Shown here: positions 20,297 through 62,461 of the stretch, in pieces
Layout: every line of letters starts with the position of its first letter
Position numbering within the stretch: the first letter of the stretch is position 1
Assembly (NCBI RefSeq): GCF_006345805.1
Contig: NC_042998.1
Coordinates: 147,498,001 to 147,562,000 of the forward strand
Length of the DNA stretch: 64,000 bases
From: Octopus sinensis
Lineage: Eukaryota
Direction of reading: 5' to 3'
Translations under genes and position numbers: made by a program
The notes under the pieces: model-generated
What the model was told of the DNA's origin: nothing
The model's input: only the letters and a program-made list of their open reading frames with translations
Databases searched by the model: none

Positions 20297-22478
<2,182 letters not shown>

Positions 22479-40244: not shown

Positions 40245-40307
40245 CTAACCAAAGTATTCCTCAAGGTATGCAACCCACTCTTTGACAGAAGCATCCGTGT
40301 TGGTAGG
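40245..40307 (-). CDS. Exon 13, terminal coding part (PTNTDASVKEWVAYLEEYFG*)
   Basis: tctcctttccattgcag|CCT ... GGT TAG; phase 0. Confidence 0.88.
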   Translation of the reverse strand, partial: PTNTDASVKEWVAYLEEYFG

Positions 40308-40337
40308 CTGCAATGGAAAGGAGACTGTGGTTATTTA

Positions 40338-40376
<39 letters not shown>

Positions 40377-43300
40377 CAGCAGCAGTAGCAGCCCAACACT
40401 CTCACTTTAAAACTAACTGTATTGATTGAAGTCAGTTGGATTGACTTACCTACAGACTGAAGTTGGGTTCTTGCATAAAGAATGAAGTTATGTCTCTTAT
40501 GTACAGATTGAAGTAATCAGGGCATCTTACCTACAGACCTATGTCGGGTGACTTGCCTACAGATCAAAGTAAGTTGGGTATCTTGCCTACATACTGAGGT
40601 AAATTGGGTCTCTTACCTACATACTGAGGTAAATTGGGTCTCTTACCTGTAAATTGAATTAAGTTGGGTATCTTATTTATAGAATGAAATATGTTGGGTC
40701 TCTGACCTATAGACTGAAGTAAGTTGGGTACCTTATCTATAGACTGAAGTAAGTTAGGTGTCTTGTCAATGGAACCAACAAGAGTGAGTTACACATAATA
40801 ACTACTCAAATTAGTTACAAATGTGTAGTTTGACCTGGTCACTTTGTGATACACAAATATTCATGGCAACCCCATACTCTGAAATGTGGTAAAATCTATA
40901 ACAAATAATATTTAAAAAACAACAAAAACTCACCGAAATATTGCCCTTCATTTTCACGTCTCCACCTCTCAAAGAAAGAAGTGCAATATTTGGATGGTCA
41001 GCAGATGACAGCTGCAATGTGCATATAATGTTAGCATTCTTGCCAACAACAACACGTAGTCTGTTTAAGTGCTGCATCCAATCAGCTGGAAGTCTAAATA
41101 AAATAGAAGCCTCACACATTACAACAGTAAACAAGGCATGAGATTAATGCGATTAATCAATCATCATCTGTTTAACACCCACATTTCCAAGCTTGCATTT
41201 GTCAGATAAGGTTGACTGAGACAGACTTTCTACAACTCAATGTCCTTCCTGTCACCAACCCTCACCAACTTTTCCAAGTAAAGTAATGTTGGCAAGGCAG
41301 GTTTTTCAAAGAGGGGAAATGAAAAGACATCACTTGAATAATGCTGACAAATCAAATCACAAATCTCACACAATATCAAGACAAGGATACACAAACATTC
41401 ATATATGCTGTATATATATATTTACACTATGATATGAATATCTATTTAAATTTTACCACAGCTGTTGTCTTTGTGTTTCAGAGCAAAAGTAGATAACTCT
41501 GCTCATTCCACTTTGCCTGGCTGACTCAAAAGTAGATCACTCTTATTTGAGTGGTTAAGAAGGACATCCAGAGCAATGATAGAAATGGTGGGTATGCAGG
41601 GAACGAGGGATGACGGTGGTGAAATTTCCCTACTCTTCAGGTTATGGAGGTTGGGAGCTTATAGCATTTAGCCTCCCACCTTGTCCAATATCAGTATCAT
41701 GGGTCTTGCTGTGCCCCTTGTTCCCTGAAACCACATCCTATCATTGAGCCAGGTATGAAAACAAGTTCACCAATCCAATAAAATCATTCATGTCATTCAT
41801 CCATGCACGGAAAATGGATGTAAAAAAAAAACAGCAGACATCAGAATAACAGGGAAAGTACAGAGTTAGTTTAAATAATAACACAAGAGTACATAGGTTG
41901 TTTAACCTTCTAGAAATAACAGCCAAATTTCCCTCAAATCACATTATAACACGAAAATAACTTTACAAAGCCTGAATTGAAGGTAAATGATAAGAGATGG
42001 GGAAAAGGAAAAATAACGAAGAAATGAGTTAGAGATGTAAAAGGAGTTTATGATAAGAGAGAGGCAGAAGGAGGAAGAGAAGAACTAAAGGGAGAGGGAA
42101 TGTCTTCTTTAAGTCTTTATTCTTTTGTCTTTTATTATCAGACTGCAAGCATGCTGGAAAAATCACTGTCATGAAGCATTTAATTAGATAGATTCATCAA
42201 CATTTTAATGTCCTCTTTTCTATGTTGGACAGAGTTTATTGATGCTGACTTTCTATGGCTGGATGCCTTTGCTATCACCAACCCTCACCTGTTTCCAAGA
42301 AAGGTAATATTTTCCCATGGCTAGACATGTTTTCAGAGAACATTGAGAATGAATGATACTGCCTATATGACAGTGGCACTCATTTACGACTATAATGCAG
42401 AGAGAAGACAAAAAGACATAAACACACACACAAACAGGCTTCTCTCACTTTCCATCTACCAAATTCACTCACAAGGCTCCAGTTGTCTCAGAGCTGTGGT
42501 AAAAGACATTTGTCTAAAGTGCCACACAATGGGACTGAACACAAAACCATGTAGTTGGGAGAAAAACTTCTTAGCTACACAGCCACACCTGCATCAAGTA
42601 AAAAAGAAATAGAATATCTAACATCTGATGGCTAAACACACAGTAAACTATTTAAAATGTGAAAGTGAACAGACAGTAAATTGCTTGTAAAGTGTTTTAT
42701 ATATGCATACACATAGACACATACACACAAAACAAGGTGGAAAATATAGTACTGAAATACCAAAGGTAGAGTAATATACTTTTTATTAAAGCCAAAAAAA
42801 TCTTCATAAACTGTTACTTAGTTTCATGTTACCGTTCATCAGACAGTTGTGATCATACCAAAATAAAAAATGATATAATATGATATGATCATATATTACA
42901 TTACATGTACCATCACAATTTTTATTTTAGTATGATCACAACTATCAGTGTTCTCGTAAAACAGTTAAGTCAAATAAGCAAATACAATCATTCATCAACA
43001 GATGCTTGCGTAGTATACTTAAAATTAGATGGCCCGAACACATAAGTAATATGGAGCTATGGCAAAGAACAAATCAAGTTTCGATTAGGAAGCAAATATT
43101 TAAGAAAAAGTGGAAGTGGATTGGTAGCACAATTAGAAAAGAAACACCAAATGTAACGAAAAGTGCTTTACAGTGGAAACTGGATGGATATAGAAAGAAA
43201 GGTAGGCCTAAGAACTCGTGGCGTAGGTCAACACAAAAGGAACTAGAGAAAGGGAGACATTCATGGTAGAGTATAAGTACAGAAACCAAAAATTATACGA

Positions 43301-46300
43301 CATGGAATTCAACTATAAGCGGCCTATAATCAGCATTGGAGGGTTAAAGGCAGGAAAAAATAATGATCACAACTATCCAGCGAATGGTAACGTGAAACCT
43401 TGAGTAACAGTTTGTAAAGATTTTTTTCAGCTTTTATATATATGTTTTCTTTTATTCTTTTACTTGTTTCAGTCATTTGACTGCAGCCATGCTGGGGCAC
43501 CACCTTAAAGAGATTTTTAGTCAAAGAAATCGACCTCAGGACTTATTCTTTGTAAGCCTAATACTTATTCTATTGGTCTCTTTTCCCAAACTGCTAAGTT
43601 ACAGAGATGTAAGCACACCATCGATTGTCAAGCGATGGTGAGGGGACAAACACAGATACACACATACACACATATATGACTGGCTTCTTTCAGTTTCCGT
43701 CTACCAAATCCACTCACAAGACTTTGGTCAACCTGATGCTATAGTAGAAGACACTTGCCCAAGGTACCATACAGTGGAACTGAACCCAGAACCATATGGT
43801 TGGAGAAGCTTAAAAAGCAGCCAATGAAATTACAAAAATGAGGTGCAGGAGACTGTCTACACAATGTAGAGGGAAATGGGAATAAAGATGAGTTTTTAGG
43901 GCAATGAAGGGAAATCATGGTTAATAAGCAACTTTACCTGTTCTGAATATCATTGATCTGTTCCTTCAAACTGGAATAATAGTGCCATCGACTTATGATG
44001 TTCTTCACACAAGAGGGTAAATTCTGGAGTTTCTGAACATGTTCAATGCAATCAGTTATATAAACATCAGAATTGTTCACCTGTTGTGGCAAGAAGAAAT
44101 AAAATTAAAGACATTTAAAACAAAAATAACTAAATGAATTCATTGAACAGGTTATAATTTTCCAGTTTGTCAATCTTTAACTTCATCTTTAGTATTGCTT
44201 AGGTGGAGTACGAGAGCATGGGAGTCAGTTCACTCTGGGTAACACTTTTATGGTAGGACAGCAATTTTGGGTCTGCTGTATAAATTTGTATAACAGTGGG
44301 TTAGTAGGGGTCTCAAGAGCTGCTCCAGGTGCCATTTCAATTATGCCATTAACTTCATTATTAGATTATAAGTCATATTTACATACATTTAACCCATGCC
44401 AGCATGGATTAGATGAATGCATTCGTAAAGCATTGTTTTTCAGCCAGATGTCATTCCTGTTACTAACCTTTACTTATTTTTTAAGTAAAGGATCACCCAT
44501 TCTCCATGTCTTTGATAGTGCAAATCCAGCAGATGAGTTGTTGACTGGAGAAATTATGGCAACATTACTGATTGTAGCTCAGTGATGTTCAGAGAAATAA
44601 ATAAATAAGGTCATGCACACAGACATCATCATCATCATCCTTTAATGTTTGTTTTTCATGCTGCCATGGGTTGGACAGTTTGACCAGAGCTGGCCAGCCA
44701 GAGAGCTGCACCAAGTTCTAGTCTGATTTCACTTGCTTTCTACAGCTGGACACCCTTCCTAATGCCAACCACTTTACAATGTGTCTGGGTGCTTTCAATG
44801 AGGCACCAGCATGAATACTTTTACATGGCACCGACACAGGTGCTTTTTATGTGACACTGGCACAGGACACTTGCAGACCAATCCTCTTCATCAGGGGATG
44901 TGGTCTTAACACTTCTGCTGTGGAGGAGTACAGTAAGACACCAGGTATCTTGGTCCTTTGTCATCTTGTCTGAAAGGTTCACATACATCAAATACATTAT
45001 AAATTGTTCTATTGTAATATAGCTACCCAATATCTTATCTGAAACCTTTGGGATTAAGTATGTTTTGGAATCCAGAATTTTTCAGATTTTGGAAATGATA
45101 AATACATGATATTCATTTGGTATATTCTTGGTTATAAATCATGACTCCAAGGAATAAGCTTACATCCAGCCTACCACCAACTTTGAAAGTAAAATTTTGA
45201 TTTGTATATTTCTTGACTGCAGGCTGGACTTAAGTTTTGAGTCCATAGAAATACTGTTACTGAATATTGATAGACCTGGCCTAGTAGCAGAGCAATTTTG
45301 AGGAAAATAGCTTTTATTCCTGTCTTTCTTTACTTTACTTGTATCTTTCATCTTTTACTTGTTTCAGTCATTAGACTGCAGCCATGCTGCGGCACTGCCT
45401 TGAAGAATTTTTAGTTGAATGAATCAACCTCAATACTTATTTTTTTTAAAGCTTGGCACTTATTCCATCGTCCCCATTTGCTGAAGCACTAAGTTACAGA
45501 GACATAAACACACCAACACCAGCTGTCAAGTAGTGGTGGAGAACAAAAACACATACACATAATATAACAGGCTTCTTTCAGTTTCTGTCTACTAAGTCCA
45601 CTCACAAAGCTTTGGTCAGCCTAAAGCAACAGTAGAAGACACTTAGCCAAGGTGCCACACAGTGGGACTGAACCATGTGGTTGAGAAGCAAGCTTCTTAC
45701 CAGACAGACACACCTGCACCTATATGTCAAGCAACAACTTATAAGCCTTTCTTTTAACCTTTTCTGATGAGTTGTTGTGCACCTGACCACTATTATACAA
45801 TAAGTTCATTATTATTACATCAGTGGCTACCTAAGAATAATGTAAAAATACAGATTAAACAAAACACCTACATACCAAACACCTAAGAAAGTTATGTAAA
45901 CACACTCTAGTGAAAGTAATTCACCTTATTGTTCATTTCAATTGTGAATAAATACTTTAAATAATATAGTTTATTTATATAATAATAAACTGGTAAATGA
46001 AGTGAGATAAAGATAGATTATAAAATTACTAGCGTAATGTCTAAGTTTGTTTAATGGCAAACATGATTTTTGGAGTGCAGATGACTTCCATTCGGAATTT
46101 TGGATAAGAGATTGTGTACCTGAATTTTTTAACAACAAGAGATTTACCTGAACGTCTGACACCAGCATGTTACCACTGTTTGATTGTTTGAAGAAGAAAG
46201 TAACAAGGAGAGATGTACCACCATCCTGAGGTGCTTTCAGTTCAATTTGAACAGAATTCTTGTCATATTTTTTTAAACTGACACCTGTGAATGATTCATA

Positions 46301-49300
46301 CACCTGATACAGCTGTTGACTTCTGTGTAAAGATGGAGCAAGTGGAAAGTATTAAGTCAGAGACAGTAAGGCAAAAATTACAATGGAGACAGTGTGATGT
46401 ATAAAGTAAACATGACAAAGGTGAATGAAAAATATATCAAAAGAAGAAGGTTTTATGACCAAAATTTTGTTTGCTTCAGAGATAAAATCCAATAGCATTA
46501 GCTTTGAAATATAATTGTTTTTAAATCAAGCACAGCCAGAAATGTAGAGGAAAGAGCAAGGTGATTATATCAATTCCAATAGTTGACTGGTACATTATCA
46601 ACCTCAGAAGAGTGGAAGGCAAACTTAACCTCAGCAGGATTTGAACTCAGTTCACTGATAACCAGAATTAATATGCAAGGTTGTCTATCTGATACTCTGT
46701 GCCAAATCACCAAAACACTTTTGTTAACATATTCCTGTTAAGGTACATTCTGTTTGTTTTGGTTATGTGAAAATAATGAAGACTTTATGCAGATAATTTT
46801 TTATGCCAATCTGCCTGAGACTGCCCTTGGTTCTGATACGAACGTCTTGTTAAAGTGATCTCAAATAAAACCTTCCACAAAATTTCACATTAATATCTTA
46901 AACCCCAGATTAATAATGAAAGTGTTTTACTAAATTCTTCATTATTATCAAAATTAATTGAAATAAAAAAAAGTTTATGTTAACATAAATATGGCAACAA
47001 AAGGGTTAAGCTGGTGTTTGGCACATGAAATTTTGATAGGAGGTTTTAATTTAGATCACTTTAAAAACAGGAACTTTGCAACAGGGAACTAGAGTTGGCC
47101 TTAGACAGGTTTGTATCAAAAACAATAAAGTTACATCTAGACAAGGATACAATTCTGAAAAGTCTTAAAAAGAAAAGGAAAAAAAAAACGATACGTATAA
47201 GGCTCTGGATTAGTAAATTCCGAAAAATATTTAAAAATAAGCAAAATATATTTCTAAGAAGAATTTTGGAAAGATAAAGTTAAAATTTAAACCTACAAAT
47301 TTAATTGCTTTTCCAATTTTTGATTCTGCGTTTGATATAGGTTTTCTTTCTGTGATAAAGTTTCTGAAAGTTGTTCACAGGATCCCTTCATATCTTCCAG
47401 TTTTATCTGGAGTTTACTCAAATTTTCCTTGCCATTCTGGCATGCCGTTTTGGCCATCTCAATCTTGGAGAGCTGAACAACAACAATAAACAAAAACAGA
47501 GATACACAACAAAAGCCAAACAATTCTTCAGATGATACTAAATATTTGCTCTAATGAGAATGCCTTTGGGAGACTAGGGGTGGCCCACAATAACTCTGCC
47601 AGTGCAAGGCCCTAGAAAAAAAATACACACGTACACACACATGTAGACACATAGTTGTAAAACAAAGTGGAAGAAAAAACACTTGACTATCAAAGGGTGG
47701 ATTAAATAAAGTCTTACTGAAGCTGAAACTCTTCACAAACTGTTACTCAGAGTTTCATACAACTGATCAGCCAACTTTAATGCCACTTCCCCATGTTTGT
47801 AGCTAGATGCCCTTCTTGTTTCCACATAAGACAGCCAGTCATGTTTCCACAAAATATTGGAAATGAACGGCACTGCTTCTATAACAGTGACATTCATTTT
47901 CAACTATCATGCAAAGCCAAGACATGAAGGCATAAACATACACACACATATATACATACACACATATACATATACAACAGGATCTTTTCAATTTCGATCT
48001 ACCAAATCCACTCACAAGGCTTTGGTCAGCCAAGGGCTATAGTAGAATGCACTTGTCCAAGGTGCCTGAACCCAAAACCATGTGTTTGGGAAGAAAACTT
48101 AATCTTCAAAGCCATGCCTATGCCTCACATCTCTCTCATTCATATTTTTTTGTTTCAGTCATTTGACTGTGGCCACGCTGGAGCCCTATCTTGATATATA
48201 TATATATATAAAACATCCATTTTCCATGCTGGCATAGGTTTGATAGTTTGACAGGAGCTGGCAAGTCAAAAGACTATGCCAAGTTCTACTGTCTGCTTTG
48301 GCATGGTTTTTACAGCGGGATGGCTTTCCTAATGCCAATCACTTTATAGAGTGTGTATTGGGTGCTTTTAACATGGAGTGGAAGCACTCCGTCGGTTATG
48401 ACAACAAGGTTTCCGGTTGATCCGAATCAACGGAACAGCCTGCTCATGAAATTAACGTGTAAGTGGCTGAGCACTCCACAGACACATGTACCTATTCCTT
48501 TATTACCCACAAGGGGCTAAACATAGATGGGACAAACATAAACAGACATAGGTATTAAGTCGATTATATCGACCCCGAAAGGATGAAAGGCAAAGTCGAC
48601 CTCGGCGGAATTTGAACTCACAACGTAACGGCAGCCGAAATACCGCTAAGCATTTCGCCCGATGTGCTAACGATTCTGCTAGCTCACCGCACATGTACCC
48701 TTAACGTAGTTCTTGGGGATATTCAGCGTGACACAGAGAGTGACAAGGCCAGCCCTTTGAAATACAGGTACAACAGAAACAGGAAGTAAGAGTGAGAGAA
48801 AGTTGTGGTGAAAGAATACAGCAGGGATCACCACCATCCCCTGCCGAAGCCTCATGGAGCTTTTAGGTGTTTTCGCTCAATAAACACTCACAACACCCGG
48901 TCTGGGAATCGAAATCGCGATCCTATGATCGCGAGTCCGCTGCCCTAACCACTGGGCCATTGCGCCTCCACACATTTTACATAACACTAGCAGCATTGAG
49001 GTCACCAAATGATTTACAAGACAAGACCCCTCAATTGAGGGAGTAGCATTAAGGAAAGTGGCTTTGTGCCAGAGGAGGGTAGTGTGAGCAGAAGGCTAGA
49101 TATATAACTAATTTTACAATTTTTCCAAATGTATACATACCAAATCCTCATGGAGATAGAAATCACTGACAGGAAGATGTTGTTCAAAGATTTCTTGAAT
49201 TTTATCAACTTTTTCTCGTTTCAACTTGCTGTACTGCTGAGACTAGGAGAGAAGAAAATATGAAACAACATTATAACTGTGGTAAATATGGTTTCAAATT

Positions 49301-52300: not shown

Positions 52301-55300
52301 CAATTATTATTATTGTTGTTGTTGTTGTTATTAGTGAACAAGTTAGTCAATTAACCAATCATCAGCAAAATGCTCTCCACCAACAATACATCTCTTTCAA
52401 TATGATGTGCTTTATAAGAATCTTGAAAAACAACTGAAAAAAAAAACCCCAACTCACTCTCCATATCCAGTAGATTGAATTTGTAGGTCAACAAAGTTCT
52501 AGGGAAAAATTCACTGTTACCCACCAGGGAAAAAACTGAAATATATTTATAAGTGGACATCTTACCATAGCTTTCACTGCAGTCACTTTGTCTGCAAGAA
52601 TTCTTATTTTTTCCTGAAGGTTGGCAAATCCTGAAAGAAAGGAGAAAAAAAAACACAAGGAAAAAAAATGTATGTGTGTATGTGTATTACTGTTATCATC
52701 ATTATCATTTTAAGCATCCACTTTTCCATGCTTCTATAGGTTATACAGAGTTTAGTGAGGCAGATTTTCTATGGGCAGATGCCCTTCCTATTGCCAGCCT
52801 CCATCTACTTCCAAGCAACGTAATATTTCCCCATGGCCAGACATGCTTACACAGAAGATTGGAAATGAATGACTCCACTTATATGACAGTGACACTCATT
52901 TACAACTATAATGTAAATGTCAAGGTAAAAAACACACACACAGAAGCTTCTTGGTCAGTCCAAGGCTTTAGCAGAAGAAATTTTCCAAAGGCGTCAAGTA
53001 GAAGGACTGAACCAGAAACAATGTAGTTGGGAAGCAAACATCTCAATCATGCACCCATTCCTGTGCCTATATATATCATCATCATTTAATGTCTATTTTC
53101 CATTTTTCTATATATAGGCTCAGGTGTGGCTGAGTTTGCTTCCCATCCACATGGTTCCAAGTTCAGTCTCACTGCATAGCACTATTATAGCCTCAGGCCA
53201 ACCAAAGCCTTGTGAGTAGATTTGGTAGACAGAAACTGAAAAAGAAGCTCATTATATATATCATCAACATCATCATCATTTAACGTTCATTTTCCATGCT
53301 AGCATGGGTTGGACGGTTCGACCGGGGTCTGGTAAGCCATGGATGCTGCACCAGGCTCTAGTCTGATTAGGCAGTGTTTCTATAGCTGGATGCCCTTCCT
53401 AACGCCAATTACTCTGTGAGTGTAGTGGGTGTTTTTTTATGTGCCACCGGCACAGGGGCCAGAGCAGGCTGGCAAACAGCCATGTAATTGGGAAATAGAT
53501 TTCTCAAGTATACAACTATGTATATATATATATATGTGTGTATATATATATATATATATACACACATACACACAGAGTGCGATGGGTAAATTGTCGTCAT
53601 TTTATTTTAAAAATTTTGTGCATGATTTGGTTTTGATTTTGTCAACTACATAGTATAATAGGGTCAGTTGGGCACCATCTGTAAGAAAAACAGCACCATG
53701 ATGCTATTCACTCTGCTAGAAATTTGGAAGCAACATGCTGTATTGCTTGGCATTCATGCTGAAAGCTCCAGTACGAGCATTTCAGAGTGTTTTGATGTCA
53801 ATATGGGGACATGTACAAGACTGGTGGGAATGAGGGAGGAAGGGATCCTGAAACTGGACACCCAGACTAAATGCTTGCAACAGAGGGGACTCAACAAAAG
53901 GCACTAGAATATGGTGTTAAACAAGATGATAGGTTAAGTCTATCAACCAAGTAGTCCAAGGTGGGATTTGAACTTAGAATGCTGAGAACCAGAACAGATA
54001 CCACTAAATATCTGAAGTGACATTGAGGCAGATTTTCTGTGGCTAGATGCCTTTCCTGTCACTAAACCTCACCTGTTTCTAAGCAAGGTACTATTTTCCT
54101 CTTGGTGGGAAACATTTAATGGAAGACCAGAAATGAATGACACCTGTTGTATGATGGTGGCACTTGCTTAGAACAATCACACAATAAGCTTCTTTCAGTT
54201 TCCATCTATGAGATCTGCTTGGTCAGCCTTGAACAGAAGCCATTATCTGCTGCACAGTGGGACTGAACTTGAAATCACATGATAAAGAAAAGAAGTTTCT
54301 TAACCACAAAGATGCTTTTATATTTTAGAATTCTTGGTTGGTCCATGGTGGAAAGTAATCCTGACCTTTTTAAAACCCTCCCTGTCCCACCTTCTGCAAA
54401 GTAAGATAGCAACATTGCAGAATCATTAATTAGAGAGTTAGATGAAAGGTTTGGCAGTATTTGTTTTAGATCTCTGTAGTCTGAAATTCAAATCCTACCA
54501 TGGGCAACTTTACCTTTTATCATTTCAGGGACCAATAAATAAAATAAAATAAAGCACTGGTCCAAGCCATAGATTAGCAGATCCAAAGTGTCAAACAAAA
54601 GAGCTTTCTGGTGTATGTTCAGGGATTAGATGATTAAATTGACCCCAGTATAAAACTGGTACTGTATTTTATCAACTCCGAAACAACGAAAGGCAAAACT
54701 GATCTTGGGAGGATTTCAATTCAAAACAAAATGACCAAGAAGAAATACCACAGGGCATTTTTTTATTTCCGATTTGTAAAGATTCTTAGAAAAAAAAAAA
54801 TTTTTTTTCAATGTTGTAATGACTCTTAAAGTGGCAAGCTGAGCAAAATGCTCAGTGGCATTTCATCCATCTTAACGTTCTGAGTTCAAACTCTGTTGAG
54901 GTTGACTTTACCTTTCATCCTTTCAGGGTCGATAAACTAAGTATCAGTTGATGTAATTGACTTACCTCCTCCCCCGAAAATACTGGCCTTGTGCCAAAAT
55001 TTAAAACCGATGATGTACTGATTCTGCCAACCCACCACCCTAGAAGTAGTAACAGTAGCAGTAGTAGTAGTGATAGTAGCAGTAGTAGTATTGCAATAAT
55101 ACATGAAGAGAGATAGTGACTGAGAAAGTGAAAGATGAGACAGAGAGAGAGTAAGAGGAAGAGAGAGAGAAAGAAAGATGAAAATGAGAGTACTAGAAAA
55201 GAAGAAAGAGAAAGAATGAGGAAATGATTGGCCAATAAACATTAAAGGATATTAATTAAAGGTGTGAAATGAAAGAGTTGCCAATCTGGTAAAAATGTAT

Positions 55301-58300
55301 GATCAATAAATAAATACAAAAATGAATTGGTAAAAATATTTACTTTGATTTAGTTCAGGAATAAGGATATTGATTTTCTCTACCAAATTTTCACTCAATT
55401 CTTTCAGCTCTGAGAGTTTGGTTCCATCTGAAATTGAAGAAAAAAAGAGGAAAAATCCTTTTGAATTAAGGATTTCTTCTTGAGTAAATATAAGAGGATT
55501 TTTGAGCACGCACAGAAGTAGTTTTGAGCAAGTACAAGAATATTTTTCTACATACTTAAAAATACAGATGCAATGCATCTATCCTGGACTGGTGCTTATT
55601 TATTGACCTTAAAAAGAATAAAAGAAGTTGACTTTGGCAGAATTTGAATCCAGAACAGCAAATGTCAGTACAAACACTAACAAATATCTTAACTGAATCT
55701 ACAAAGTTGCCATTAATGACAGCGGCAGCACTACTTAGAGAATCAGACAAAATATGATCTTTGTCTTTCATTGCTTCACGGTCAATAAAAAATATTAAAC
55801 TAATTCAGTGGTTTCTAAGAATGTTTAACAATCTTGGCACAGGGCCAGCAGTTTTTGAAGGGAAGGGGAAGTCAATTACAACAACCCCAGTATTCAGCTG
55901 GTACTTATTTTATTGATTCCGTAAAAATGAAAGGCAAAATCAACCTGGGACGAATTTGAACTCAGAACATAAGGACGGATGAAATGCCATTAAACATTTT
56001 ATCCTGATGTGCAAATGATTCTGCCAGCTCATCACTTTAGTGGCTTGTAAGAATGTCACACTAAATGCCTTGTAACATTTGTTCTAGAGCTTTGTGTTCT
56101 GAGTTCAAATACCACCATAACCCACTTTATCAGACACCAAGTTTTTACTGCCACCACCTAGCACCTTGGGTGTCTTTGGTGGACCCTACTTTGTTGCAAG
56201 CATTTTGGTCAGGGATCCAGTTTTCAAGATACTTTCTTCCCTCCCTCCCTCTCACCCAACAATCTCAAAGACCCTATAAAGGGTCATCAACACCAGCATC
56301 CCATCTGACTCATCATCATCATTACCATTTAGTGTAACATCTATTAAGCTGACATAAGTAGGATAGCTTGACAGGGTCTGATGGGGTTACAGCATTGCAT
56401 CAAGCTCCAATGTCTGCTCCAATGACATGATTTCTGCAGCTGGATGTTTTTCCTAACACTGATACCAGAGCTTTTGTCATGGCACCAGCATAAGTGGGAT
56501 CATTATGCAGTATACAAGATTAAGATCACCTTCAACTGAGTGGGTGGCTCTATGCAAGGCAATGAGAGGTTAAAGTTTGAAAGAAGGGGCTGGAAGAGGT
56601 TTCTTGCAGTAAAGGAGATGCATGGCTTCTTACATTATAGAAGAGTGGATAGGAGTTATTGGGGTGGATGTGGAAGGAGAGATAAAGATGGTGGTGATTA
56701 GGTGTCTGGGTGGACCTTAAGAAGAATAGGAAAGGTGGGGTGAGGTTACAAGAGTATATGGGGAAAGTGAGGGGTAGTTAAAGATGGGGTAAGAGTGGGG
56801 TGAGCACTATACTGAATGATAAACAAGTGTTGGATGGGGGAGAGAGGTGATGGTAAATATGAATTAGAGGGAAGGTGGGAGAGAGAGAGAGTAAAAGATT
56901 AAATAAATAAAACTCCATCATTAACACTGCAAAACATCAATAAAGTTTGAATTTTTCTAAGTTACCAGCAGTTTTCTATCTTACCATAGCAAATTGGATC
57001 CAGTAATTCTTTGTCTTTGGTAGTCAGGAACTTCAAAAGAAGGAGTCGTGCCTCGAGTTGAGAAACAAGCTTCTTTGATGCACTCCTCTTGTCCTGAACA
57101 ACAAAATCAATAGAAATATTACATTTGTTTCCATAGGTGAGGGGATGAAGAGGTGAAAGAGAGAGAGAGAAGGATAATACTTAACCAATACTCTCACCAT
57201 GTTATCTCCCCTCTTTTTTGTTCATTCATTTTTCCATGTCAGCATGAGTTAGAGCAGTGGTTCTCAAACAGGGTCCATATAAGATTTTTGGGGGTCCACA
57301 CAACAAAATAGTAAATTGGGGATCCACAAAAATGTTTTAAGGAGCTCTGAAAAATTTTGCTTTTGATTTATGTATTGGTATATACTGCAAAAAACAGCTA
57401 GATTTCTTTCTCTAACATTTTACACAATTCAACCTACACAAATTAATGTGTGAAAATATTAATAAATACCATTCTATAAAACTAGTTTTTAAACATTGAA
57501 TGGCAATAGGGGTCCACCATAATAAAATAGCAATCAAAGGGATTCATAGATAGAAAATGGTTGAGAACCCCTGAGAGGAATACACACATTATTGAGGCAT
57601 GAGATATATATATATATATAATCATCATAATTTTAACATTCACTTTTCCATACTTGCATGGGTTCAACAAAGTTTGTTGAAGCAGATTTTCTATAGCTGA
57701 ATGTCTCTTCCCATTACCAACCCTTAATTATTCCAAGCAAGGTAATATTCCCCTTAGTCCTTCAAACATGAACAGCACAATTGCCAGACATGTTTTCATG
57801 GAACATTGCAAATGAATGATACCACTTGTATGACAGTGACATTTATTTACAAGTAGTGTGCAATGTCAAGACAATGAGTCATGAACGCATTCTCACACAA
57901 ACACGTACTCGCATTCGTACACACACACACAAGTAATATATACAAAGAGGGTTTTTTTTGAGATACTTTGAAAATTTTTGAGATTTTGTGAATTGTTCCA
58001 GAAACATTTTCTTTGAGATTTTCTTTTGAAGTTTATTAAGCTTTTAAAAATCTTCCCTTCAAGCAATTTTAATATCTGTTTACCTTAATCTCCAAAACAC
58101 TTGTGTTAGATATTCCACAATCAACATGGAGCTCCTTAAATAGAAGCTCTTCTGACATCAACTGCTTCATTAGTCTGAAAGACAAAAATCAAAACTGTGA
58201 GAGTGAGGGGGAATTAGGAAATGTGTCACATTATTGTACTATTGTTTATCACAACTAATGGAAGACTAAGTGATTATAATGTAGATGATGAAAACTATGA

Positions 58301-59512
58301 TTATAGTGATGGTACGGATAACACTAACCAGAAAACTTATTACCATAAAATTGATGATGATAAGGAAGGTGATAATGATGAAAGACAGGAGAACTATGAT
58401 GAATGGAATTTGTTGAAGCAGATTTTCTACAGCTGGATGCCTTTCCCATTGCCAATCCACAATTGTTTCCAAACAAGGTAATATTTCGCTCATTTCAAAA
58501 ATGAGCTAAGAGAATGACTCAGAGTGGCTAGTGGCATGTATTTGAACAACATAGACAAATGCAGGTACATCAAATACCATACAACATGAAATTTTGATTT
58601 ATTAGAATTATCTCTGCCTCCAAAGGATATGTCATAATTACTAAAAGATATTTAAGACCAGCTTCACTTCAAAAAGGGAGATAATCTTAAGAATCAAGAA
58701 TTCTTAATGGCATGCTATTTAAGGAAAAGGACAGGTTTTCTACTCTTTTTTGTATAAGTCTAGGTTCCTTGAGTACTGCAGATAAGACCAAGCAATTGTC
58801 AAGGTGATGATGGCTATTGAGCCAGAAACAAGTGGTTACTAACTGTCCTCTTATCTACAGACAGTAAGCCTGTCCTTTTCTTCAATGACATATCAACTTT
58901 GGAGAATTCTTGACTCTTGAGGTTATCTCTTCTGTGGAGGTGGTCATAATTGCTATTTGATAATTATGATACATCCTCCAGAGTTGGAGATAATTTTAAC
59001 AAAGCAAAAATTTATGTTGTATGGTATTTGATATATGTTTAGTTTTATATATACATACACACATGTATATATATATTCTTTTATTCTTTTACTTGTTTCA
59101 CTCATTTGACTGCAGCCCTACTGGGGCACCACCTTGAAGTGTTTTAGTTGAGCAAATCGATTCCAGGGCTTTTTTGAGCCTAGCACTTATCCTATTGGTT
59201 TCTTTGGCTGAACCATTAAGTAACAGGGATGTAAATACACAAACACCAGTTGTCAAGCAGTGATGGGGGGGGGGCTAAACAGGGTTACAAAGACTCACAC
59301 AGATATGTAGTTCAAGTTTACTGAAAACAAAAGATGAGAGGTGAAGGAACAACAAGCAGGTGTATTAGTTTAAAACTCAGGCAAAATGGGAAAATGTTTG
59401 ACATTTTAAGCCTCTGCTCTTTGACAAAATGGATTAAGAGGAACAAAAAAAAAAACAAAGATAAAAAATGTGTAGGGATTAACGGTTCAACATGATGAAT
59501 ACAGATCTATAC

Positions 59513-59559
<47 letters not shown>

Positions 59560-61109
59560 CTAGCAGTATCGCCCGGCGTTGCTCGGGTTTGTAAGGGAAA
59601 TAACTATATAGCATTTTTAGAGAGTTATAGCCAAAAAATAGCAAAAAATGCATTAAAAATGGAAAAAAAATGATGGTAATTTTTTTAAATCGTTGACTCA
59701 TCGTAGACATTTTTAGAGAGTTATTCCCTTATATAATAGCGAAAAAATGCATTAAAAATGGAAAAAAAATGATGGTAAATTTTTTTTTAAATCGTTGACT
59801 CATGTAGACGCTTTCTTAGCCATTTCTGTTTTGGTGTCTTCAAGCCATGAAGTCGTTGTTCTAAAAGAACGCTGGTCTCCTTGACAACGCATTACGACGT
59901 TGATTTCCTTACACTCCCTTCCCCACAGGTGCAGGTGTGAGCGTGGACGCCAACTCCGCCGCCATCGACACACGAAAAATTATGCATTAAAATGGAATAA
60001 AAAATGATGTTAAATTATTTTTAAAATCGTAGACTCATCGTTGACGCGCGCTAATAGTCAGACGGGCTCGATATGAATCACGACTATAAGCTACCCGAAT
60101 TTGGTTAAACTGCACCGCAAAATGTGGGAGTAGTTAGGAATCTAAATCGAAGGGGACAGACACTCACACAACTACAGTTTTATATATATAGATATACATA
60201 GCGCAGTAGTGGTGAGATGTGACAGCAAAGAAAAGCATACATTCACTCTCTGCATGCAATTAGACTCGGAAAGTTCGTGAGGAACCCATTGACCCAATTT
60301 GCTGACTTTTCCGATAGCACACAGGTCTCAATGAATGGTTGAATGACCAAATCCAAGCTTCTCTGCTAGTTCCTCAACAGTTACGATGAGATTTTGTTCC
60401 ACCAGGGTTTTCAGGATGTCCTTGTCGAGTTCTACAGATCTTTCAGGATGAGGCTCGTCTTCTAGGCTGTAGTTTATGGCTCGGAATTTCTGGAACCACC
60501 ATTGACACTGCCTTACGCTTATTGTCCAATCCCCATATACTGCATTAATATTTCTTGTACTTTCCGTTGCGTTGTTGTCTTTATTGAACTCATAAAGCAA
60601 AATATGCCAAATATGCTCCTTTGTTACTTCCAATATAGCTTTGAAAAAAATAGCTGTTAAAATCGAAATTCACTCTTCAAAACTTGCACTATGAATAAGG
60701 ACAAGATAAAATTACTACCTGCTTTTATAGCAAGTTAATATAAGTAGTTTATCCCATTCCCCTCTGACATTTAGTTCAAGCTGTTGAAAAAACCGCATTA
60801 TTATATATATATATACATACATACATACATACATATACACACACACTCTCTCTCTCACACACATGCACACATTTATATTCTGTTATTGTTTTATACGTTT
60901 CAGCCTTGAGGTTGTGGCCATGCTGGATCATGTGTGTGTGTGTGTGTGTGTCTATCTGTCTGTCTCTCTGTATGTATATATGTATATGTATGTGTGTAAA
61001 CAATAATATTTTCAACAGATGTGTTGCAGATGTATCTGATTGTTCTCAAGCTTCAATACTGTGTGTGTGTGTATGTGTGTGTGTGTGTATGTATGTATAT
61101 GTATGTATG

Positions 61110-61140
<31 letters not shown>

Positions 61141-62461
61141 GTGTGTATGTATGTGTGTGTGTGTGTATGTATGTGTGTATGTATGTATGTATGTATGTAT
61201 GTATGTATGTATGTATGTATGTATGAGTGTATGTTTACTTTATTACTCTCTGGCTATTTACTCTCTTCCAAGAACATTTTCACTCACTCTTATGTGTTAG
61301 CTTCCCATACATTTTACTCATGTATCTATCAGTCATCAGTCGTCATAGCATTCTATTGTCTACCTGTCAACACACTGAATTAGTTTCACTTTATTCGTAG
61401 CACACTGTGTGTGTGCGTTTGCGTGTGGTGTAAACCAGACTAAGAAAAGCATTTGACACACACACCAGAATGTGAGTTTTCTGTAAATTTTGCTTAATTG
61501 GAGTTTAAATTTTAAAAACTGGACCTGGCATGACGCGATGCATTGTACTCTTAAAAATGCTAGGTAAATTGTAATTGAAGAAATCCTATATTGTAGATTT
61601 GTATAACTCCCAAAGGGAGGCAGATAAAATCTGCCTTTTATAATAAGAGATATATATATATCTCTTATTATAAAAGGCAGATTTTATCTGCCTCCCTTTG
61701 GGAGTTATACAAATCTACAATATAGCATTTCTTCAATTACAATTTACCTACCATTTTTAAGAGTACAATGCATCGCGTCATGCCAGGTCCCGTTTTTAAA
61801 ATTTAAACTCCAATTAAGCAAAATTTACAGAAAACTCACATTCTGGTGTGTGTGTCAAATGCTTTTCTTAGTCTGGTTTACACCACACGCAAACGCACAC
61901 ACACAGTGTGCAATGAATAAACTGAAACTAATTCACTGTGTGTTGACAGGTAGAAAATAGAATGCGATGGCGATGGCTATGGCGATGGCGATGGCTATGG
62001 CGATGGCGATGGCGATGGCTATGGCGATGGCGATGGCTATGGCGATGGCGATGGCTATGGCGATGGCGATGTAATATTTGTTTCTCTCTATGACGCTCAT
62101 AAAAGCATTGATGTACATGTGTGCGTGCGTGAGTGTGTGTGTGTCATTCCTCACACACACGCATACACATACATATATGAGAGTGGCAAACACAAACGTT
62201 TCAAACAACTACATACAAACACGTGTGTGTTTGTTATTAGTAAAAAAATGCGCCAAAACACAACTCACTTATCATTCCAACACATTTGCAAAGACACACG
62301 GATGGTCGAATAACAATACAGAAAAGGTAAATAGGTTTTTTTTACTCTGTATATATTTTATTATATAATATTATATATAGATATATGTTATATAATTGCA
62401 CCAAACCGCCCGAAAAAAATTTTGGTTAATGTGACCAAGCCGCCCGAATTTACCTATTCAT
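40245..62461 (-). CDS. 13-exon gene, 425 aa: coiled coil + tandem-RWD-like C-terminus (Zwint-1-like/kinetochore RWD protein candidate)
   Basis: Hand-spliced exons with GT-AG boundaries and matching phases total 1278 nt, open to TAG at 40245-40247: MNRLMKQLMSEELLFKEL...KLEKQLNLSQQLYQVYESFTGVSL...QINDIQNRLPADWMQHLNRLRVVVGKNANIICTLQL...SVKEWVAYLEEYFG*. Exons 1 and 7 are the least certain. Family identity is inference. Confidence 0.85.
40420..40770. repeat. 30 bp minisatellite (~11-12 units) in intron 12
   Basis: Unit tcttacctacatactgaggtaaattgggtc; period of 30 is visible in the register of the text. Confidence 0.9.
40934..41093 (-). CDS. Exon 12 (LPADWMQHLNRLRVVVGKNANIICTLQL...KGNIS)
   Basis: ttctattttatttag|A ... 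TCG|gtgagt; 160 nt, phase 2 to 0. Confidence 0.92.
42809..42848 (-). ncRNA. Minimal type-I hammerhead ribozyme, near intact, in the sense strand of intron 11
   Basis: AACUGU CUGAUGA ACG guaa CAU GAAAC uaa GUA ACAGUU: 6 bp stem I, intact core, one C-A mismatch in stem II. Confidence 0.7.
43000..43350 (+). mobile_element. RTE-clade LINE 3' fragment
   Basis: LRSILKIRWPEHISNMELWQRT...WKWIG..RK..GRPKNSWRR. Confidence 0.85.
43371..43412 (+). ncRNA. Degenerate inverted copy of the 42809-42848 hammerhead
   Basis: aactat CCAGCGA atg gtaa cgt GAAAC cttga GTA acagtt; core mutated. Confidence 0.5.
43938..44080 (-). CDS. Exon 11 (VNNSDVYITDCIEHVQ...KEQINDIQN)
   Basis: ttcttcttgccacaacag|GTG ... ACAG|gtaaag; 143 nt, phase 0 to 2; missed by the ORF track. 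Confidence 0.92.
46148..46322 (-). CDS. Exon 10 (SQQLYQVYESFTGVSLKKYDKNSVQIELK...MLVSDVQ)
   Basis: ctccatctttacacag|A ... CAG|gtaaat; 175 nt, phase 2 to 0. Confidence 0.92.
46720..47010. mobile_element. piggyBac-like MITE remnant
   Basis: Ends aaatatggcaacaaaagggttaa; related right end aaatatagtaacgaaagggttaa at ~63190-63214; left end decayed. Confidence 0.45.
47297..47472 (-). CDS. Exon 9 (coiled coil LSKIEMAK...QKLEKQLN)
   Basis: ttgttgttgttcag|CTC ... AATTT|gtaggt; 176 nt, phase 0 to 2; lies inside track ORF 47293-47523. Confidence 0.92.
48375..48970 (-). mobile_element. tRNA(Arg)-head SINE with family-C tail, interrupted by a SINE B copy
   Basis: Head matches 12356-12540; tail matches ~36320-36495; SINE B at 48493-48689 with TSD cacatgtacc. 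Confidence 0.85.
49141..49242 (-). CDS. Exon 8 (SQQYSKLKREKVDKIQEIFEQHLPVSDFYLHEDL)
   Basis: ttttcttctctcctag|TCT ... TTG|gtatgt; 102 nt, phase 0 to 0. Confidence 0.9.
49991..50029 (+). ncRNA. Degenerate minimal hammerhead motif (different family)
   Basis: acg CCGAUGA cgg..uca GAAAC ucga GUC cgu; perfect palindrome ACUCGAGU in stem III; U4 and stem II mutated. Confidence 0.45.
50243..51090 (-). mobile_element. RTE-clade LINE, 5'-truncated, with complete 3' UTR and (GAT)n tail
   Basis: ORF 50480-51181: KGRLYDACVRTAMLHG.ETW, RLRWYGHVLR, GRGRPRKTW; 18 nt in-frame tandem (STPDPQ) near the C-terminus. Its 3' UTR is the source of many short fragments (~55-130, 41140-41340, 42190-42420, 44580-44850, 52690-52920, 53270-53480, 57610-57870, 63760-64000). 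Confidence 0.92.
51393..51453 (-). CDS. Exon 7 (DKLPKDCTLFFEVKLFLNVK)
   Basis: cttttccctgcttttctag|A ... AAA|gtaaac; phase 2 to 0; an alternative in-frame donor GAA|gtgaaa would start the intron at 51416. Confidence 0.6.
51966..52016. repeat. 20 bp-stem hairpin in intron 6
   Basis: GATAGGTGTCCTCACCTTGT / 11 nt loop / ACAAGGTGAGGACACTTATC: 19 Watson-Crick pairs + 1 G-U on plus. Confidence 0.9.
52458..52498 (-). CDS. Exon 6 (NFVDLQIQSTGYG)
   Basis: atttttccctag|AAC ... GGAGA|gtgagt; 41 nt, phase 0 to 2; follows a 67 nt intron. Confidence 0.75.
52566..52630 (-). CDS. Exon 5 (FANLQEKIRILADKVTAVKAM)
   Basis: ttctcctttctttcag|GA ... ATG|gtaaga; 65 nt, phase 1 to 0. Confidence 0.9.
55344..55427 (-). 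CDS. Exon 4 (GTKLSELKELSENLVEKINILIPELNQ)
   Basis: ttcttcaatttcag|AT ... CAAA|gtaaat; 84 nt, phase 1 to 1. Confidence 0.9.
56985..57093 (-). CDS. Exon 3 (DKRSASKKLVSQLEARLLLLKFLTTKDKELLDPICY)
   Basis: ttttgttgttcag|GAC ... TATG|gtaaga; 109 nt, phase 0 to 1. Confidence 0.9.
57255..57573. mobile_element. hAT-type MITE
   Basis: TIRs cagtggttctcaaac / ggttgagaacccctg; TSD not recognisable. Confidence 0.7.
58084..58174 (-). CDS. Exon 2 (LMKQLMSEELLFKELHVDCGISNTSVLEIK)
   Basis: tttttgtctttcag|A ... AAG|gtaaac; 91 nt, phase 2 to 0. Confidence 0.85.
58568..59033. mobile_element. Old fold-back MITE (TA-flanked)
   Basis: ~190 bp diverged inverted arms (atcaaataccatacaacat.../...atgttgtatggtatttgat) around a ~100 bp spacer. 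Confidence 0.75.
59559..60193 (-). mobile_element. Non-autonomous Helitron-like element (H1)
   Basis: 5' a|TCTATATATA; 3' cccgagcaacgccgggcg...CTAG|t; internal tandem subunits; ~160 bp extra segment absent from H2. Confidence 0.75.
60235..60700 (-). mobile_element. Mariner transposase 5' fragment
   Basis: ORF 60328-60633 (HILLYEF..WFQKFR...EELAEKLG..HSTI) continuing after a break into WVPHEL. Confidence 0.9.
61348..61965. repeat. ~620 bp near-perfect palindrome centred on (TA)n at ~61655
   Basis: Two ~300 bp arms with few mismatches and no loop; each arm has the hairpin aggcagat-aaa-atctgcct near the centre. Confidence 0.95.
61660..62381 (-). mobile_element. Helitron/Helentron-like non-autonomous element with internal (GCGATG)n
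   Basis: 5' a|TCTATATATAAT at ~62381, hexamer microsatellite 61962-62071, terminal hairpin; classification is inference. Confidence 0.5.

What the first reader, a model, noticed from the sequence alone, without database searches (positions are those of the whole stretch)
40245..62461. Probably unnamed coiled-coil + tandem-RWD-like protein: candidate full-length cephalopod Zwint-1-type kinetochore subunit
The ORF track hides this gene. Splicing gives 425 aa: ~245 aa helical/coiled coil, then YESFTGVSL followed by beta-strands and a helix, then a second unit (QINDIQNRLPADW..RLRVVV..IICTLQL..HP..SVKEWVAYL). That layout matches the coiled-coil + double-RWD kinetochore proteins (Zwint-1/Knl1 C-terminus, CENP-O/P). 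The second unit recalls, from memory and unverified, uncharacterised fish proteins with F-A-I-D-W...V-C-x-L...Y-P and a terminal S-L-x-x-W-L motif. Mammalian ZWINT is shorter, so a long invertebrate form would be informative.
Basis: partly seen in the sequence, partly recalled or inferred. Interest (0 to 1): 0.7.

Follow-up and report, generated by a model that had tools for sequence, protein, structure and literature searches.

The report
Octopus ZWINT kinetochore gene, unannotated
The region holds 10 of the 11 coding exons of a real octopus gene, labelled "uncharacterized" in databases, that is the octopus version of the kinetochore protein ZWINT (Zwint-1) in its ancestral long form; that long form is already described in frogs, chickens and plants, so this fixes an annotation and is not a new kind of protein.

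Summary
The gene model and the novelty claim need correcting.

**Gene model.** On the minus strand, ten exons with canonical splice sites (58174..40245) encode residues 11-399 of Octopus sinensis XP_029658144.1 (LOC115232421, "uncharacterized", 399 aa) at 100% identity. The proposed start (ATG at 62461) and the 425-aa length are not. The annotated first coding exons lie 47 kb (isoform X1) and 13 kb (X2) beyond the window edge, and isoform X3 starts at 58170.

**Identity.**
- A cephalopod profile searched against 1.84 billion proteins finds a ~400-aa family across Metazoa. It includes echidna "ZW10 interactor", which matches Pfam Zwint at 1.3e-43.
- An invertebrate-only profile aligns with named long-form vertebrate ZWINT at hhalign probability 99.9%, E = 1.9e-32.
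- The globular C-terminus alone gives E = 6.9e-27.
- An AlphaFold2 model (pLDDT about 80, about 90 in the C-terminus) shows long helices plus two RWD units.
- The top-ranked Foldseek hits are mostly kinetochore RWD proteins (SPC25, CENP-O/P, Spc24).
- No family member hits the Pfam CENP-O or CENP-P models.

**Novelty.** Low. Tandem-RWD Zwint-1 is already published as the ancestral state, lost in humans.

The parts
58084..58174 (-). Coding exon 2 (91 nt; residues 11-41, RLMKQLMSEELLFKELHVDCGISNTSVLEIK). It contains the ATG at 58170 that isoform X3 uses as its start.
   Evidence: Acceptor tttgtctttcag|A, donor AAG|gtaaac. 100% identical to XP_029658144.1. Isoform X3 sequence.
56985..57093 (-). 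Coding exon 3 (109 nt; residues 42-77 plus the first base of codon 78). Holds the conserved N-terminal motif KDKRSASKKLVSQLEARLLLLKFL.
   Evidence: KDK..LEAR..L.K is invariant in four cephalopods. It aligns with the RKKDKLLCSQL region of echidna ZWINT in the MAFFT alignment.
55344..55427 (-). Coding exon 4 (84 nt; residues 78-105, partial codon at each end); helical region.
52566..52630 (-). Coding exon 5 (65 nt; residues 106-127); helical region.
49141..49242 (-). Coding exon 6 (102 nt; residues 128-161). Includes the break between the two long helices (low pLDDT at 148-154).
47297..47472 (-). Coding exon 7 (176 nt; residues 162-219 plus two bases of codon 220); second long helix.
   Evidence: Donor TTT|gtaggt.
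46148..46322 (-). Coding exon 8 (175 nt; residues 220-278). End of the coiled coil and the four beta-strands of the first RWD unit (YESFTGVSL...).
43938..44080 (-). Coding exon 9 (143 nt; residues 279-326). Helices of the first RWD unit and the linker helix (RWHYYSSLKEQINDIQNR).
40934..41093 (-). Coding exon 10 (160 nt; residues 326-379). Beta-strands of the second RWD unit (LPADW..LRVVVGKNANIICTLQL..HP). The annotated donor is TCG|gtgagt, not the upstream GAC|gtgaaa that I first chose.
   Evidence: VGKNANIICTLQL is invariant in four cephalopods.
40245..40307 (-). Coding exon 11 (63 nt; residues 380-399 plus stop TAG at 40247-40245). Terminal helix with the family motif SVKEWVAYLEEYFG.
   Evidence: W390 and L394 are invariant across 39 metazoan family members.

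Best explanation
The region carries coding exons 2-11 of Octopus sinensis LOC115232421. This gene is the cephalopod orthologue of the outer-kinetochore protein Zwint-1 (ZWINT in vertebrates, Kre28/Sos7 in fungi) in its ancestral long form: about 227 residues of long helices followed by two RWD domains.

**Shown here:** the gene structure, membership of a metazoan-wide ~400-aa family that includes proteins named ZWINT, and a confidently predicted tandem-RWD C-terminus.

**Inferred from published work on the family:** its helices form a parallel coiled coil with the C-terminal helical region of KNL1. Its two RWDs pair with KNL1's two RWDs, as CENP-O pairs with CENP-P. The resulting Knl1 complex docks on the Mis12 complex, stabilising KNL1 at the kinetochore and so supporting spindle-checkpoint signalling and error correction.
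For: **Gene model**
- Ten canonical exons are 100% identical to XP_029658144.1 residues 11-399.
- The window is collinear with the O. sinensis chromosome.
- Orthologues of 391-410 aa exist in O. bimaculoides, O. vulgaris, Argonauta and Acanthosepion.
- The decapodiform orthologue sits as an uninterrupted ORF on a 1,486-nt contig from sequencing run SRR27666072. I read that contig as an assembled transcript.

**Family**
- The cephalopod-only profile, searched against 1.84e9 representatives, gave 57 hits at E <= 1e-3. Most are 380-440 aa and match nearly full length.
- One hit is echidna ZW10 interactor XP_038604199.1 (E = 8.7e-8). It carries Pfam Zwint at 1.3e-43. A second Zwint-positive hit is P0060.
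- hhalign of the invertebrate-only profile against named long-form ZWINT of monotremes, turtles and a gecko: probability 99.9%, E = 1.9e-32, 295 collinear columns.
- C-terminus only: E = 6.9e-27. Crossed controls: E = 0.46-0.9.
- Pfam over 39 members: Sos7 in 5, Zwint in 1, Knl1_RWD_C in 1, CENP-O/P in none.
- The PDB profile search lists Spc25, yeast Spc105/KNL1 and human ZWINT (8ppr_Z, 2.7e-4, collinear 23-210 with 24-214).

**Fold**
- AF2 model with 39 sequences: pLDDT 79.6, and about 85-94 over residues 230-399. Each of the two units has four strands plus helices.
- Foldseek hits: SPC25 3.4e-4, CENP-O 8.7e-4 over 200 columns, then Spc24/25, CENP-P, Ctf19/Mcm21, FANCL, a Mediator chain and Mad1.

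**Mechanism (literature)**
- Zwint-1 has double-RWD similarity and is proposed to pair with Knl1 as CENP-O pairs with CENP-P (10.1101/514885).
- AF2 models of frog and chicken ZWINT have tandem RWDs, which humans have lost. ZWINT and KNL1 are paralogues. The ZWINT/KNL1 coiled coil was validated by mutants (PMC11189300).
- Arabidopsis Zwint1 has two RWDs, yeast one, human none (PMC12595034).
Against: - The octopus protein does not match Pfam Zwint (PF15556) or Sos7 directly, even at E <= 1.
- The helical halves alone are only weakly similar between invertebrates and vertebrates: hhalign E = 6.6e-4, probability 27%. The link to the part of ZWINT that mammals retain is therefore indirect. It goes through long-form vertebrate proteins that carry both parts.
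- KNL1's own RWD structures are not among the top 50 Foldseek hits.
- The search from echidna ZWINT returned only vertebrates, but that tool depends on shared words. No proteome-level reciprocal best-hit test was possible.
- There are no binding, localisation or expression data for octopus.
- The model is a monomer. The pairing with KNL1 was not modelled.
Confidence: 0.9

Rival explanations
1. It is the cephalopod orthologue of CENP-O or CENP-P. These inner-kinetochore proteins also have an N-terminal coil plus tandem RWDs, and they dimerise within the CENP-OPQUR complex.
For: CENP-O and CENP-P chains are among the best Foldseek matches, and they are the ones that cover both RWD units: 7qoo_O 8.7e-4 over 200 columns, plus 7pkn_O, 7pb8_O/P and 7qoo_P.
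Against: - None of the 39 family members hits the Pfam CENP-O or CENP-P models at E <= 0.01. Several hit Sos7, Zwint or Knl1_RWD_C.
- Profile-profile homology to named ZWINT is E = 1.9e-32.
- The exhaustive search brought in named ZW10 interactor proteins and no protein named CENP-O or CENP-P among those looked up.
- The Foldseek identities are only 9-17%, as expected for fold-level paralogy.
Confidence: 0.03
2. It is homologous to Zwint-1, but in cephalopods it has drifted to another role. One version is a generic coiled-coil scaffold that no longer binds KNL1. Another is one of two paralogues, with the other acting as the kinetochore subunit.
For: - The N-terminal helical half is poorly conserved beyond molluscs.
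- There is no direct Pfam hit.
- No functional data exist.
Against: - Only one cephalopod lineage of this family appears among the hits, with one gene per species looked up.
- The RWD module is strongly conserved from octopus to cuttlefish, with VGKNANIICTLQL invariant.
- The family-wide invariant residues D330, W390 and L394 are kept. That argues for purifying selection on the ancestral interface.
Confidence: 0.05
3. The exon chain is a prediction artefact or pseudogene, and no such protein is made.
For: The O. sinensis models are automated (Gnomon XP_ records) with three alternative 5' ends, and I saw no octopus RNA evidence directly.
Against: - All ten exons have intact frames and canonical splice sites.
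- The O. vulgaris annotation contains proteins of the same lengths, 396 and 399 aa.
- Orthologues are conserved across cephalopods.
- The decapodiform orthologue is assembled as an uninterrupted ORF on a 1.5-kb contig from a sequencing run, which I read as a transcript.
Confidence: 0.01

Closest known systems
Long-form vertebrate ZWINT / ZW10 interactor (monotremes, turtles, gecko; frog and chicken in the literature)
   Same: - Similar length: 365-397 aa against 399 aa.
- Same order of parts: helical N-terminus, long coiled coil, two RWD units, terminal L..W..YL helix.
- Profile-profile E = 1.9e-32 over 295 collinear columns.
- Tandem RWDs are predicted for frog and chicken ZWINT (PMC11189300).
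   Different: - Only about 18% identity.
- The octopus N-terminal helical half is too diverged for Pfam Zwint.
- Octopus has HP where most members have YP in the second RWD, and it has a KDKRS..SQLEAR version of the N-terminal motif.
Human/therian ZWINT (277 aa; PDB 8PPR chain Z)
   Same: Weak collinear similarity of the helical region (8ppr_Z, E = 2.7e-4, 23-210 with 24-214). The role in the Knl1 complex is presumed to be the same.
   Different: Therian ZWINT lacks the tandem RWD module altogether (about 280 aa; PMC11189300). That module is the most conserved part of the octopus protein.
Fungal Kre28 / Sos7 and plant Zwint1
   Same: [quoted passage not shown] Five metazoan family members give sub-threshold Pfam Sos7 hits. 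Arabidopsis Zwint1 also has two RWDs (PMC12595034).
   Different: Kre28 has a single RWD. The octopus protein has no direct Sos7 hit. I did not align plant or fungal sequences here.
CENP-O/CENP-P (Mcm21/Ctf19) and KNL1 C-terminus
   Same: Coil plus tandem-RWD architecture. CENP-O/P are the best two-domain structural matches. One family member hits Pfam Knl1_RWD_C at 4.9e-5.
   Different: These are paralogous families. There are no CENP-O/P Pfam hits. KNL1 is a very large protein with a long disordered N-terminal part (PMC11189300), whereas this protein is 399 aa.

Membership tests
Zwint-1 (ZWINT / Kre28 / Sos7) | Direct match of the protein to the curated family model (Pfam PF15556 Zwint or PF20882 Sos7) | tested here: not met
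   No Zwint or Sos7 hit for any of the four cephalopod proteins at E <= 1. The Pfam Zwint model covers only the helical part and is matched here only by vertebrate sequences.
Zwint-1 (ZWINT / Kre28 / Sos7) | Profile-level sequence homology to proteins named and modelled as ZWINT | tested here: met
   - The cephalopod profile hits echidna ZW10 interactor (E = 8.7e-8, Pfam Zwint 1.3e-43) and P0060 (Pfam Zwint 1.3e-17).
- hhalign of the invertebrate-only profile against named long ZWINT: 99.9%, E = 1.9e-32.
- C-terminus only: 6.9e-27. Controls are null.
Zwint-1 (ZWINT / Kre28 / Sos7) | Ancestral architecture: helical N-terminus, long coiled coil, C-terminal tandem RWD | tested here: met
   AF2 model with pLDDT 79.6. 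Helices at 35-66, 79-146 and 155-232, then two units of four strands plus helices at 234-326 and 329-398. Foldseek hits are to kinetochore RWD proteins.
Zwint-1 (ZWINT / Kre28 / Sos7) | One-to-one orthology (reciprocal best hit within the octopus proteome) | tested here: inconclusive
   Only one cephalopod lineage appears among the 57 hits. The reverse search from echidna ZWINT returned vertebrates only, because that tool depends on shared words. No O. sinensis proteome was available to search.
Zwint-1 (ZWINT / Kre28 / Sos7) | Binds the KNL1 C-terminal region and localises to kinetochores | not testable with these tools
   Only monomer prediction is offered, and no octopus KNL1 sequence was in hand.
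Kinetochore-type RWD fold (UBC-like superfamily) | Alpha/beta RWD topology recognised by structure comparison | tested here: met
   Single-RWD matches: chicken Spc24/Spc25 globular-domain chains 3vz9_B (TM by target 0.76, rmsd 3.2 A) and 3vza_A (0.71, 3.5 A), and SPC25 8ppr_G (0.65). Two-domain matches: CENP-O/P.
CENP-O / CENP-P | Match to the family models (Pfam CENP-O, CENP-P) | tested here: not met
   No hit in any of 39 family members at E <= 0.01, nor in the four cephalopod proteins at E <= 1. The similarity is at fold level only.
KNL1 (Spc105/Spc7) | Very large scaffold with a long disordered N-terminal part followed by C-terminal coil and RWDs | tested here: not met
   The protein is 399 aa with no long disordered N-terminal part. 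Only 1 of 39 members touches Pfam Knl1_RWD_C (4.9e-5), consistent with the paralogy proposed in PMC11189300.

The most novel reading that the evidence does not exclude
The octopus protein is a working example, in an animal, of the ancestral Knl1 complex. Zwint-1's two RWDs pair with KNL1's two RWDs and give the complex an extra contact with the Mis12 complex, as predicted for Arabidopsis, and therian mammals have lost that contact. The survey here also suggests the loss happened on the therian stem. Monotreme, turtle and gecko ZWINT keep the RWD module, while every placental ZWINT retrieved is about 280 aa. That dates the loss more finely than "lost in humans".
Probability: 0.5. Interest if true: 0.35.

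Novelty: new member of a known kind. Interest (0 to 1): 0.2.

Why it matters
The main value is in annotation. LOC115232421 and its orthologues across molluscs, annelids, brachiopods, echinoderms, cnidarians, placozoans, tunicates and lamprey are labelled "uncharacterized". Some carry misleading names: myosin-11-like, cingulin-like, paramyosin, myosin heavy chain, centromere protein F-like, reticulocyte-binding protein homolog 2a-like. Calling them Zwint-1 would complete the outer-kinetochore parts list for these animals. It also shows that the current Pfam Zwint model misses every non-vertebrate member tested here and does not cover the RWD module. A model built on that module would find them.

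It does not change the understanding of kinetochores. The coiled-coil plus tandem-RWD form of Zwint-1, and its paralogy with KNL1, are already published.

Tried and rejected
1. **My first splice chain** included a candidate exon at 59207-59133 and a short donor for the 41.0k exon. Both were wrong once the annotated protein was mapped.
2. **Searches for the first coding exon** (METKEIAEVY) inside the window, by six-frame strings and by degenerate DNA patterns, found nothing. It lies outside the window.
I could not reproduce 425 aa, and no isoform uses this start.
4. **Pfam and PDB sequence searches** with the single octopus protein gave only coiled-coil noise.
5. **The first AF2 model**, from four sequences, was too weak to use (pLDDT 58.9). 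I did not submit it to a fold search.
6. **Two non-family hits** of the HMMER search were set aside as repeat or composition artefacts: P0052 (ankyrin repeats) and P0053.
7. **My recollection** that the octopus KDK..SQL motif resembles human ZWINT's KKDKLLCSQL was only weakly borne out. The two align in MAFFT, but the helical halves alone score E = 6.6e-4.

Full report
**1. What is in the sequence**

The finding frames 40245-62461.

Reading the DNA around them shows canonical acceptor and donor sites with matching codon phases. A first eight-exon chain gave a continuous 300-aa frame.

A word-indexed search of 5.8 billion proteins with that model returned four cephalopod proteins of 391-410 aa, all unnamed:
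- Octopus sinensis LOC115232421 isoform X1 (XP_029658144.1, 399 aa)
- O. bimaculoides LOC106868412
- Argonauta hians
- Acanthosepion pharaonis

Mapping the O. sinensis protein back onto the window corrected my model. It uses three exons I had missed (58.1k, 57.1k, 49.2k) and the longer donor of the 41.0k exon. It does not use my candidate at 59207-59133.

The final table has ten exons:

| Exon | Window coordinates (minus strand) |
|---|---|
| 2 | 58174-58084 |
| 3 | 57093-56985 |
| 4 | 55427-55344 |
| 5 | 52630-52566 |
| 6 | 49242-49141 |
| 7 | 47472-47297 |
| 8 | 46322-46148 |
| 9 | 44080-43938 |
| 10 | 41093-40934 |
| 11 | 40307-40245 |

All have AG/GT boundaries. Together they translate to residues 11-399 with no mismatch.

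**2.

- The first ten residues (METKEIAEVY) are not encoded anywhere in the window.
- The locus fetched from the O. sinensis assembly (GCA_006345805.1, CM016860.1) is collinear with the window, without indels. It places that first coding exon 46,969 bp beyond position 64000.
- The first intron is therefore about 52.8 kb, and the annotated gene spans 70.7 kb.
- Isoform X2 (396 aa) has an alternative first coding exon (MVACREA) about 13 kb beyond the window. Isoform X3 (387 aa) starts at the ATG at 58170 inside exon 2.
No isoform uses it, and I could not reproduce 425 aa.

The N-terminal exon of isoform X1 is conserved in O. bimaculoides X1, Argonauta and Acanthosepion, which supports that model.

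**3. What the protein is: sequence evidence**

The octopus protein alone matches no Pfam family and no PDB sequence above coiled-coil noise.

A profile of the four cephalopod proteins was searched exhaustively with HMMER against 1.84 billion cluster representatives. It found 57 proteins at E <= 1e-3, and 28 at E <= 1e-10. Most are 380-440 aa and match over nearly their whole length.

Source names show a metazoan-wide family:
- gastropods, bivalves, annelids
- a brachiopod, a hemichordate, a starfish
- Nematostella, Trichoplax, a tunicate, lamprey

Most are unnamed or carry misleading coiled-coil names.

One hit, P0042 (E = 8.7e-8), is "ZW10 interactor isoform X2" of the echidna. It matches Pfam Zwint (PF15556) at 1.3e-43 over residues 43-250, and it also carries the C-terminal module that the cephalopod profile recognised. 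A second hit, P0060, is also Zwint-positive at 1.3e-17.

Searching from the echidna protein gave named ZWINTs of two kinds:
- long forms of 365-397 aa in monotremes, turtles and a gecko
- short forms of about 280 aa in placental mammals

I then built two profiles: an invertebrate-only profile (37 sequences, no echidna, no lamprey) and a profile of ten named long-form vertebrate ZWINTs. The hhalign results:

| Comparison | Probability | E-value | Columns |
|---|---|---|---|
| Full length | 99.9% | 1.9e-32 | 295, collinear to the terminal W..YL helix |
| Globular C-terminus only | 99.7% | 6.9e-27 | 152 |
| Helical halves only | 27% | 6.6e-4 | 54 |
| Crossed controls | about 0% | 0.46 and 0.9 | 7-16 |

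Coiled coils can inflate such scores, which is why I repeated the comparison on parts. The homology rests on the RWD module.

Across all 39 aligned members, Pfam gives Sos7 in five (sub-threshold; Sos7 is the fission-yeast Zwint-1), Zwint in one, Knl1_RWD_C in one, and CENP-O or CENP-P in none.

A PDB profile search lists Spc25, yeast Spc105/KNL1 and human ZWINT (8ppr_Z, 2.7e-4, collinear) among coiled-coil noise.

**4. Fold evidence**

With four sequences AlphaFold2 gave a poor model (pLDDT 58.9). With the 39-sequence alignment it gave pLDDT 79.6, and about 85-94 over residues 230-399.

The model has helices at 35-66, 79-146 and 155-232, followed by two units:
- Unit 1: strands 234-239, 243-248, 258-266, 272-279, then helices 287-296 and 299-326.
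- Unit 2: strands 329-332, 337-342, 348-353, 363-369, then helix 387-398.

Foldseek against the PDB returns mostly kinetochore RWD proteins at the top:
- SPC25 (8ppr_G, 3.4e-4)
- CENP-O (7qoo_O, 8.7e-4, 200 columns spanning both units; also 7pkn_O and 7pb8_O)
- chicken Spc24/Spc25 globular-domain chains (3vz9_B, TM by target 0.76, rmsd 3.2 A)
- CENP-P and yeast Ctf19/Mcm21
- FANCL, a Mediator chain and the Mad1 C-terminal domain

KNL1's own RWD structures are not in the top 50. I note that but do not consider it decisive.

**5. Mechanism**

Shown here: the gene, the family and the fold.

Inferred from the literature:
- Zwint-1 was linked to double RWDs by profile-profile searches and proposed to pair with Knl1 as CENP-O pairs with CENP-P (10.1101/514885).
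- In the human KMN work, ZWINT 76-220 and KNL1 1960-2133 are modelled as a parallel coiled coil ending at KNL1's RWDs, with N-terminal segments forming a four-helix bundle. Interface mutants weaken KNL1 binding and kinetochore localisation.
- AF3 models give Zwint1 two RWDs in Arabidopsis, one in yeast and none in human. The first Arabidopsis RWD is predicted to touch the C-terminal helix of Mis12 (PMC12595034).

By homology, the octopus protein most likely forms the Knl1 complex with octopus KNL1 through coil-coil and RWD-RWD pairing, and docks on the Mis12 complex. I could not model the complex.

**6. Rivals**

- **CENP-O/P.** Fold-level similarity only. There are no family-model hits, and the sequence link to ZWINT is strong.
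- **A diverged, non-kinetochore role.** This cannot be excluded without experiments. It is disfavoured by the strict conservation of the RWD module and of the family-invariant residues D330, W390 and L394.
- **Prediction artefact.** Disfavoured by intact frames, conservation across cephalopods, and an uninterrupted ORF for the decapodiform orthologue on a 1.5-kb contig from run SRR27666072, which I read as a transcript.

**7. Novelty and verdict**

The idea that a long invertebrate Zwint would be newly informative is overtaken by published work, because the tandem-RWD form is already regarded as ancestral.

What is new is modest:
- Cephalopod LOC115232421 and a large set of unnamed or misnamed invertebrate proteins can be called Zwint-1.
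- The RWD module is a much better family signature than the current Pfam Zwint model.
- The vertebrate survey hints that the RWD loss is therian, since monotremes keep the module. No marsupial sequence was seen.

Novelty class: new member of a known kind. Interest: 0.2.

**8. Surroundings**

The introns and the flank below 40 kb hold ordinary repeats:
- non-LTR reverse-transcriptase fragments at 12905-13447 and 20458-21162
- a zf-RVT ORF at 21233-22249
- a Mos1/mariner HTH remnant at 60328-60633 inside the first intron
- several microsatellites

I saw no second host gene in the window. I did not attempt spliced-gene prediction for 1-40000.

Noticed in passing
beyond window position 64000 (L001 10001-10032 and 43979-44001): Both annotated alternative first coding exons of the gene lie outside the window: isoform X1 (METKEIAEVY) about 47 kb beyond the edge and isoform X2 (MVACREA) about 13 kb beyond. 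The first intron of isoform X1 is about 52.8 kb, while the other nine introns are 0.6-3.3 kb.
   Followed up: yes
window 60328-60633 (-): A 101-aa ORF inside the first intron matches the HTH domain of Mos1/mariner transposase (Pfam HTH_48, 3.2e-20). It is a transposon remnant in the same orientation as the gene.
   Followed up: partly
window 12905-13447 (+), 20458-21162 (+), 21233-22249 (+), 15699-16652 (-): The first three ORFs are retrotransposon fragments (RVT_1 3.2e-8 and 5.5e-14; zf-RVT 7.9e-6). The 317-aa ORF at 15699-16652 has no Pfam hit, but by eye its C-terminal part resembles that of the 21233-22249 ORF. I did not look for spliced host genes in 1-40000.
   Followed up: partly
window 50480-51181 (-) and 43006-43269 (+): These are intronic ORFs of 233 aa and 87 aa with no Pfam hit. 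Their motifs (GRGRPRKTWDEVV / KKGRPKNSWRRS) look, from my own knowledge, like the C-terminal tails of LINE-type reverse transcriptases. GC content rises to 0.45 around 50-52 kb.
   Followed up: partly
window 39.8-40.05k, 40.34-40.40k, 60.8-61.3k, 61.96-62.08k: Microsatellites and low-complexity runs flank the gene parts, judged from the repetitive ORF translations.
   Followed up: no
family members P0006, P0009, P0011, P0016, P0017, P0025: Orthologues in other invertebrates carry misleading automated names: myosin-11-like (Ylistrum), cingulin-like (Mytilus), paramyosin (Nematostella), centromere protein F-like (Saccoglossus), myosin heavy chain (Lingula), and reticulocyte-binding protein homolog 2a-like (Saccostrea).
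   Followed up: yes
vertebrate ZWINT hits (P0042, P0070, P0073-P0083 versus P0084-P0160): Monotreme, turtle and gecko ZWINT are long (365-397 aa) and keep the C-terminal RWD-type module. Placental ZWINTs are about 280 aa. This suggests the RWD loss happened on the therian stem. No marsupial sequence was seen.
   Followed up: partly
residues 356-359 of the protein (window exon 10, 41093-40934): Most family members have a YP dipeptide after the CTL strand of the second RWD (consensus CTLxxPxxYPxxG), reminiscent of the YPxxxP motif of canonical RWD/UBC domains. Octopus species have HP, and Argonauta and Acanthosepion differ again (QP, QS).
   Followed up: no
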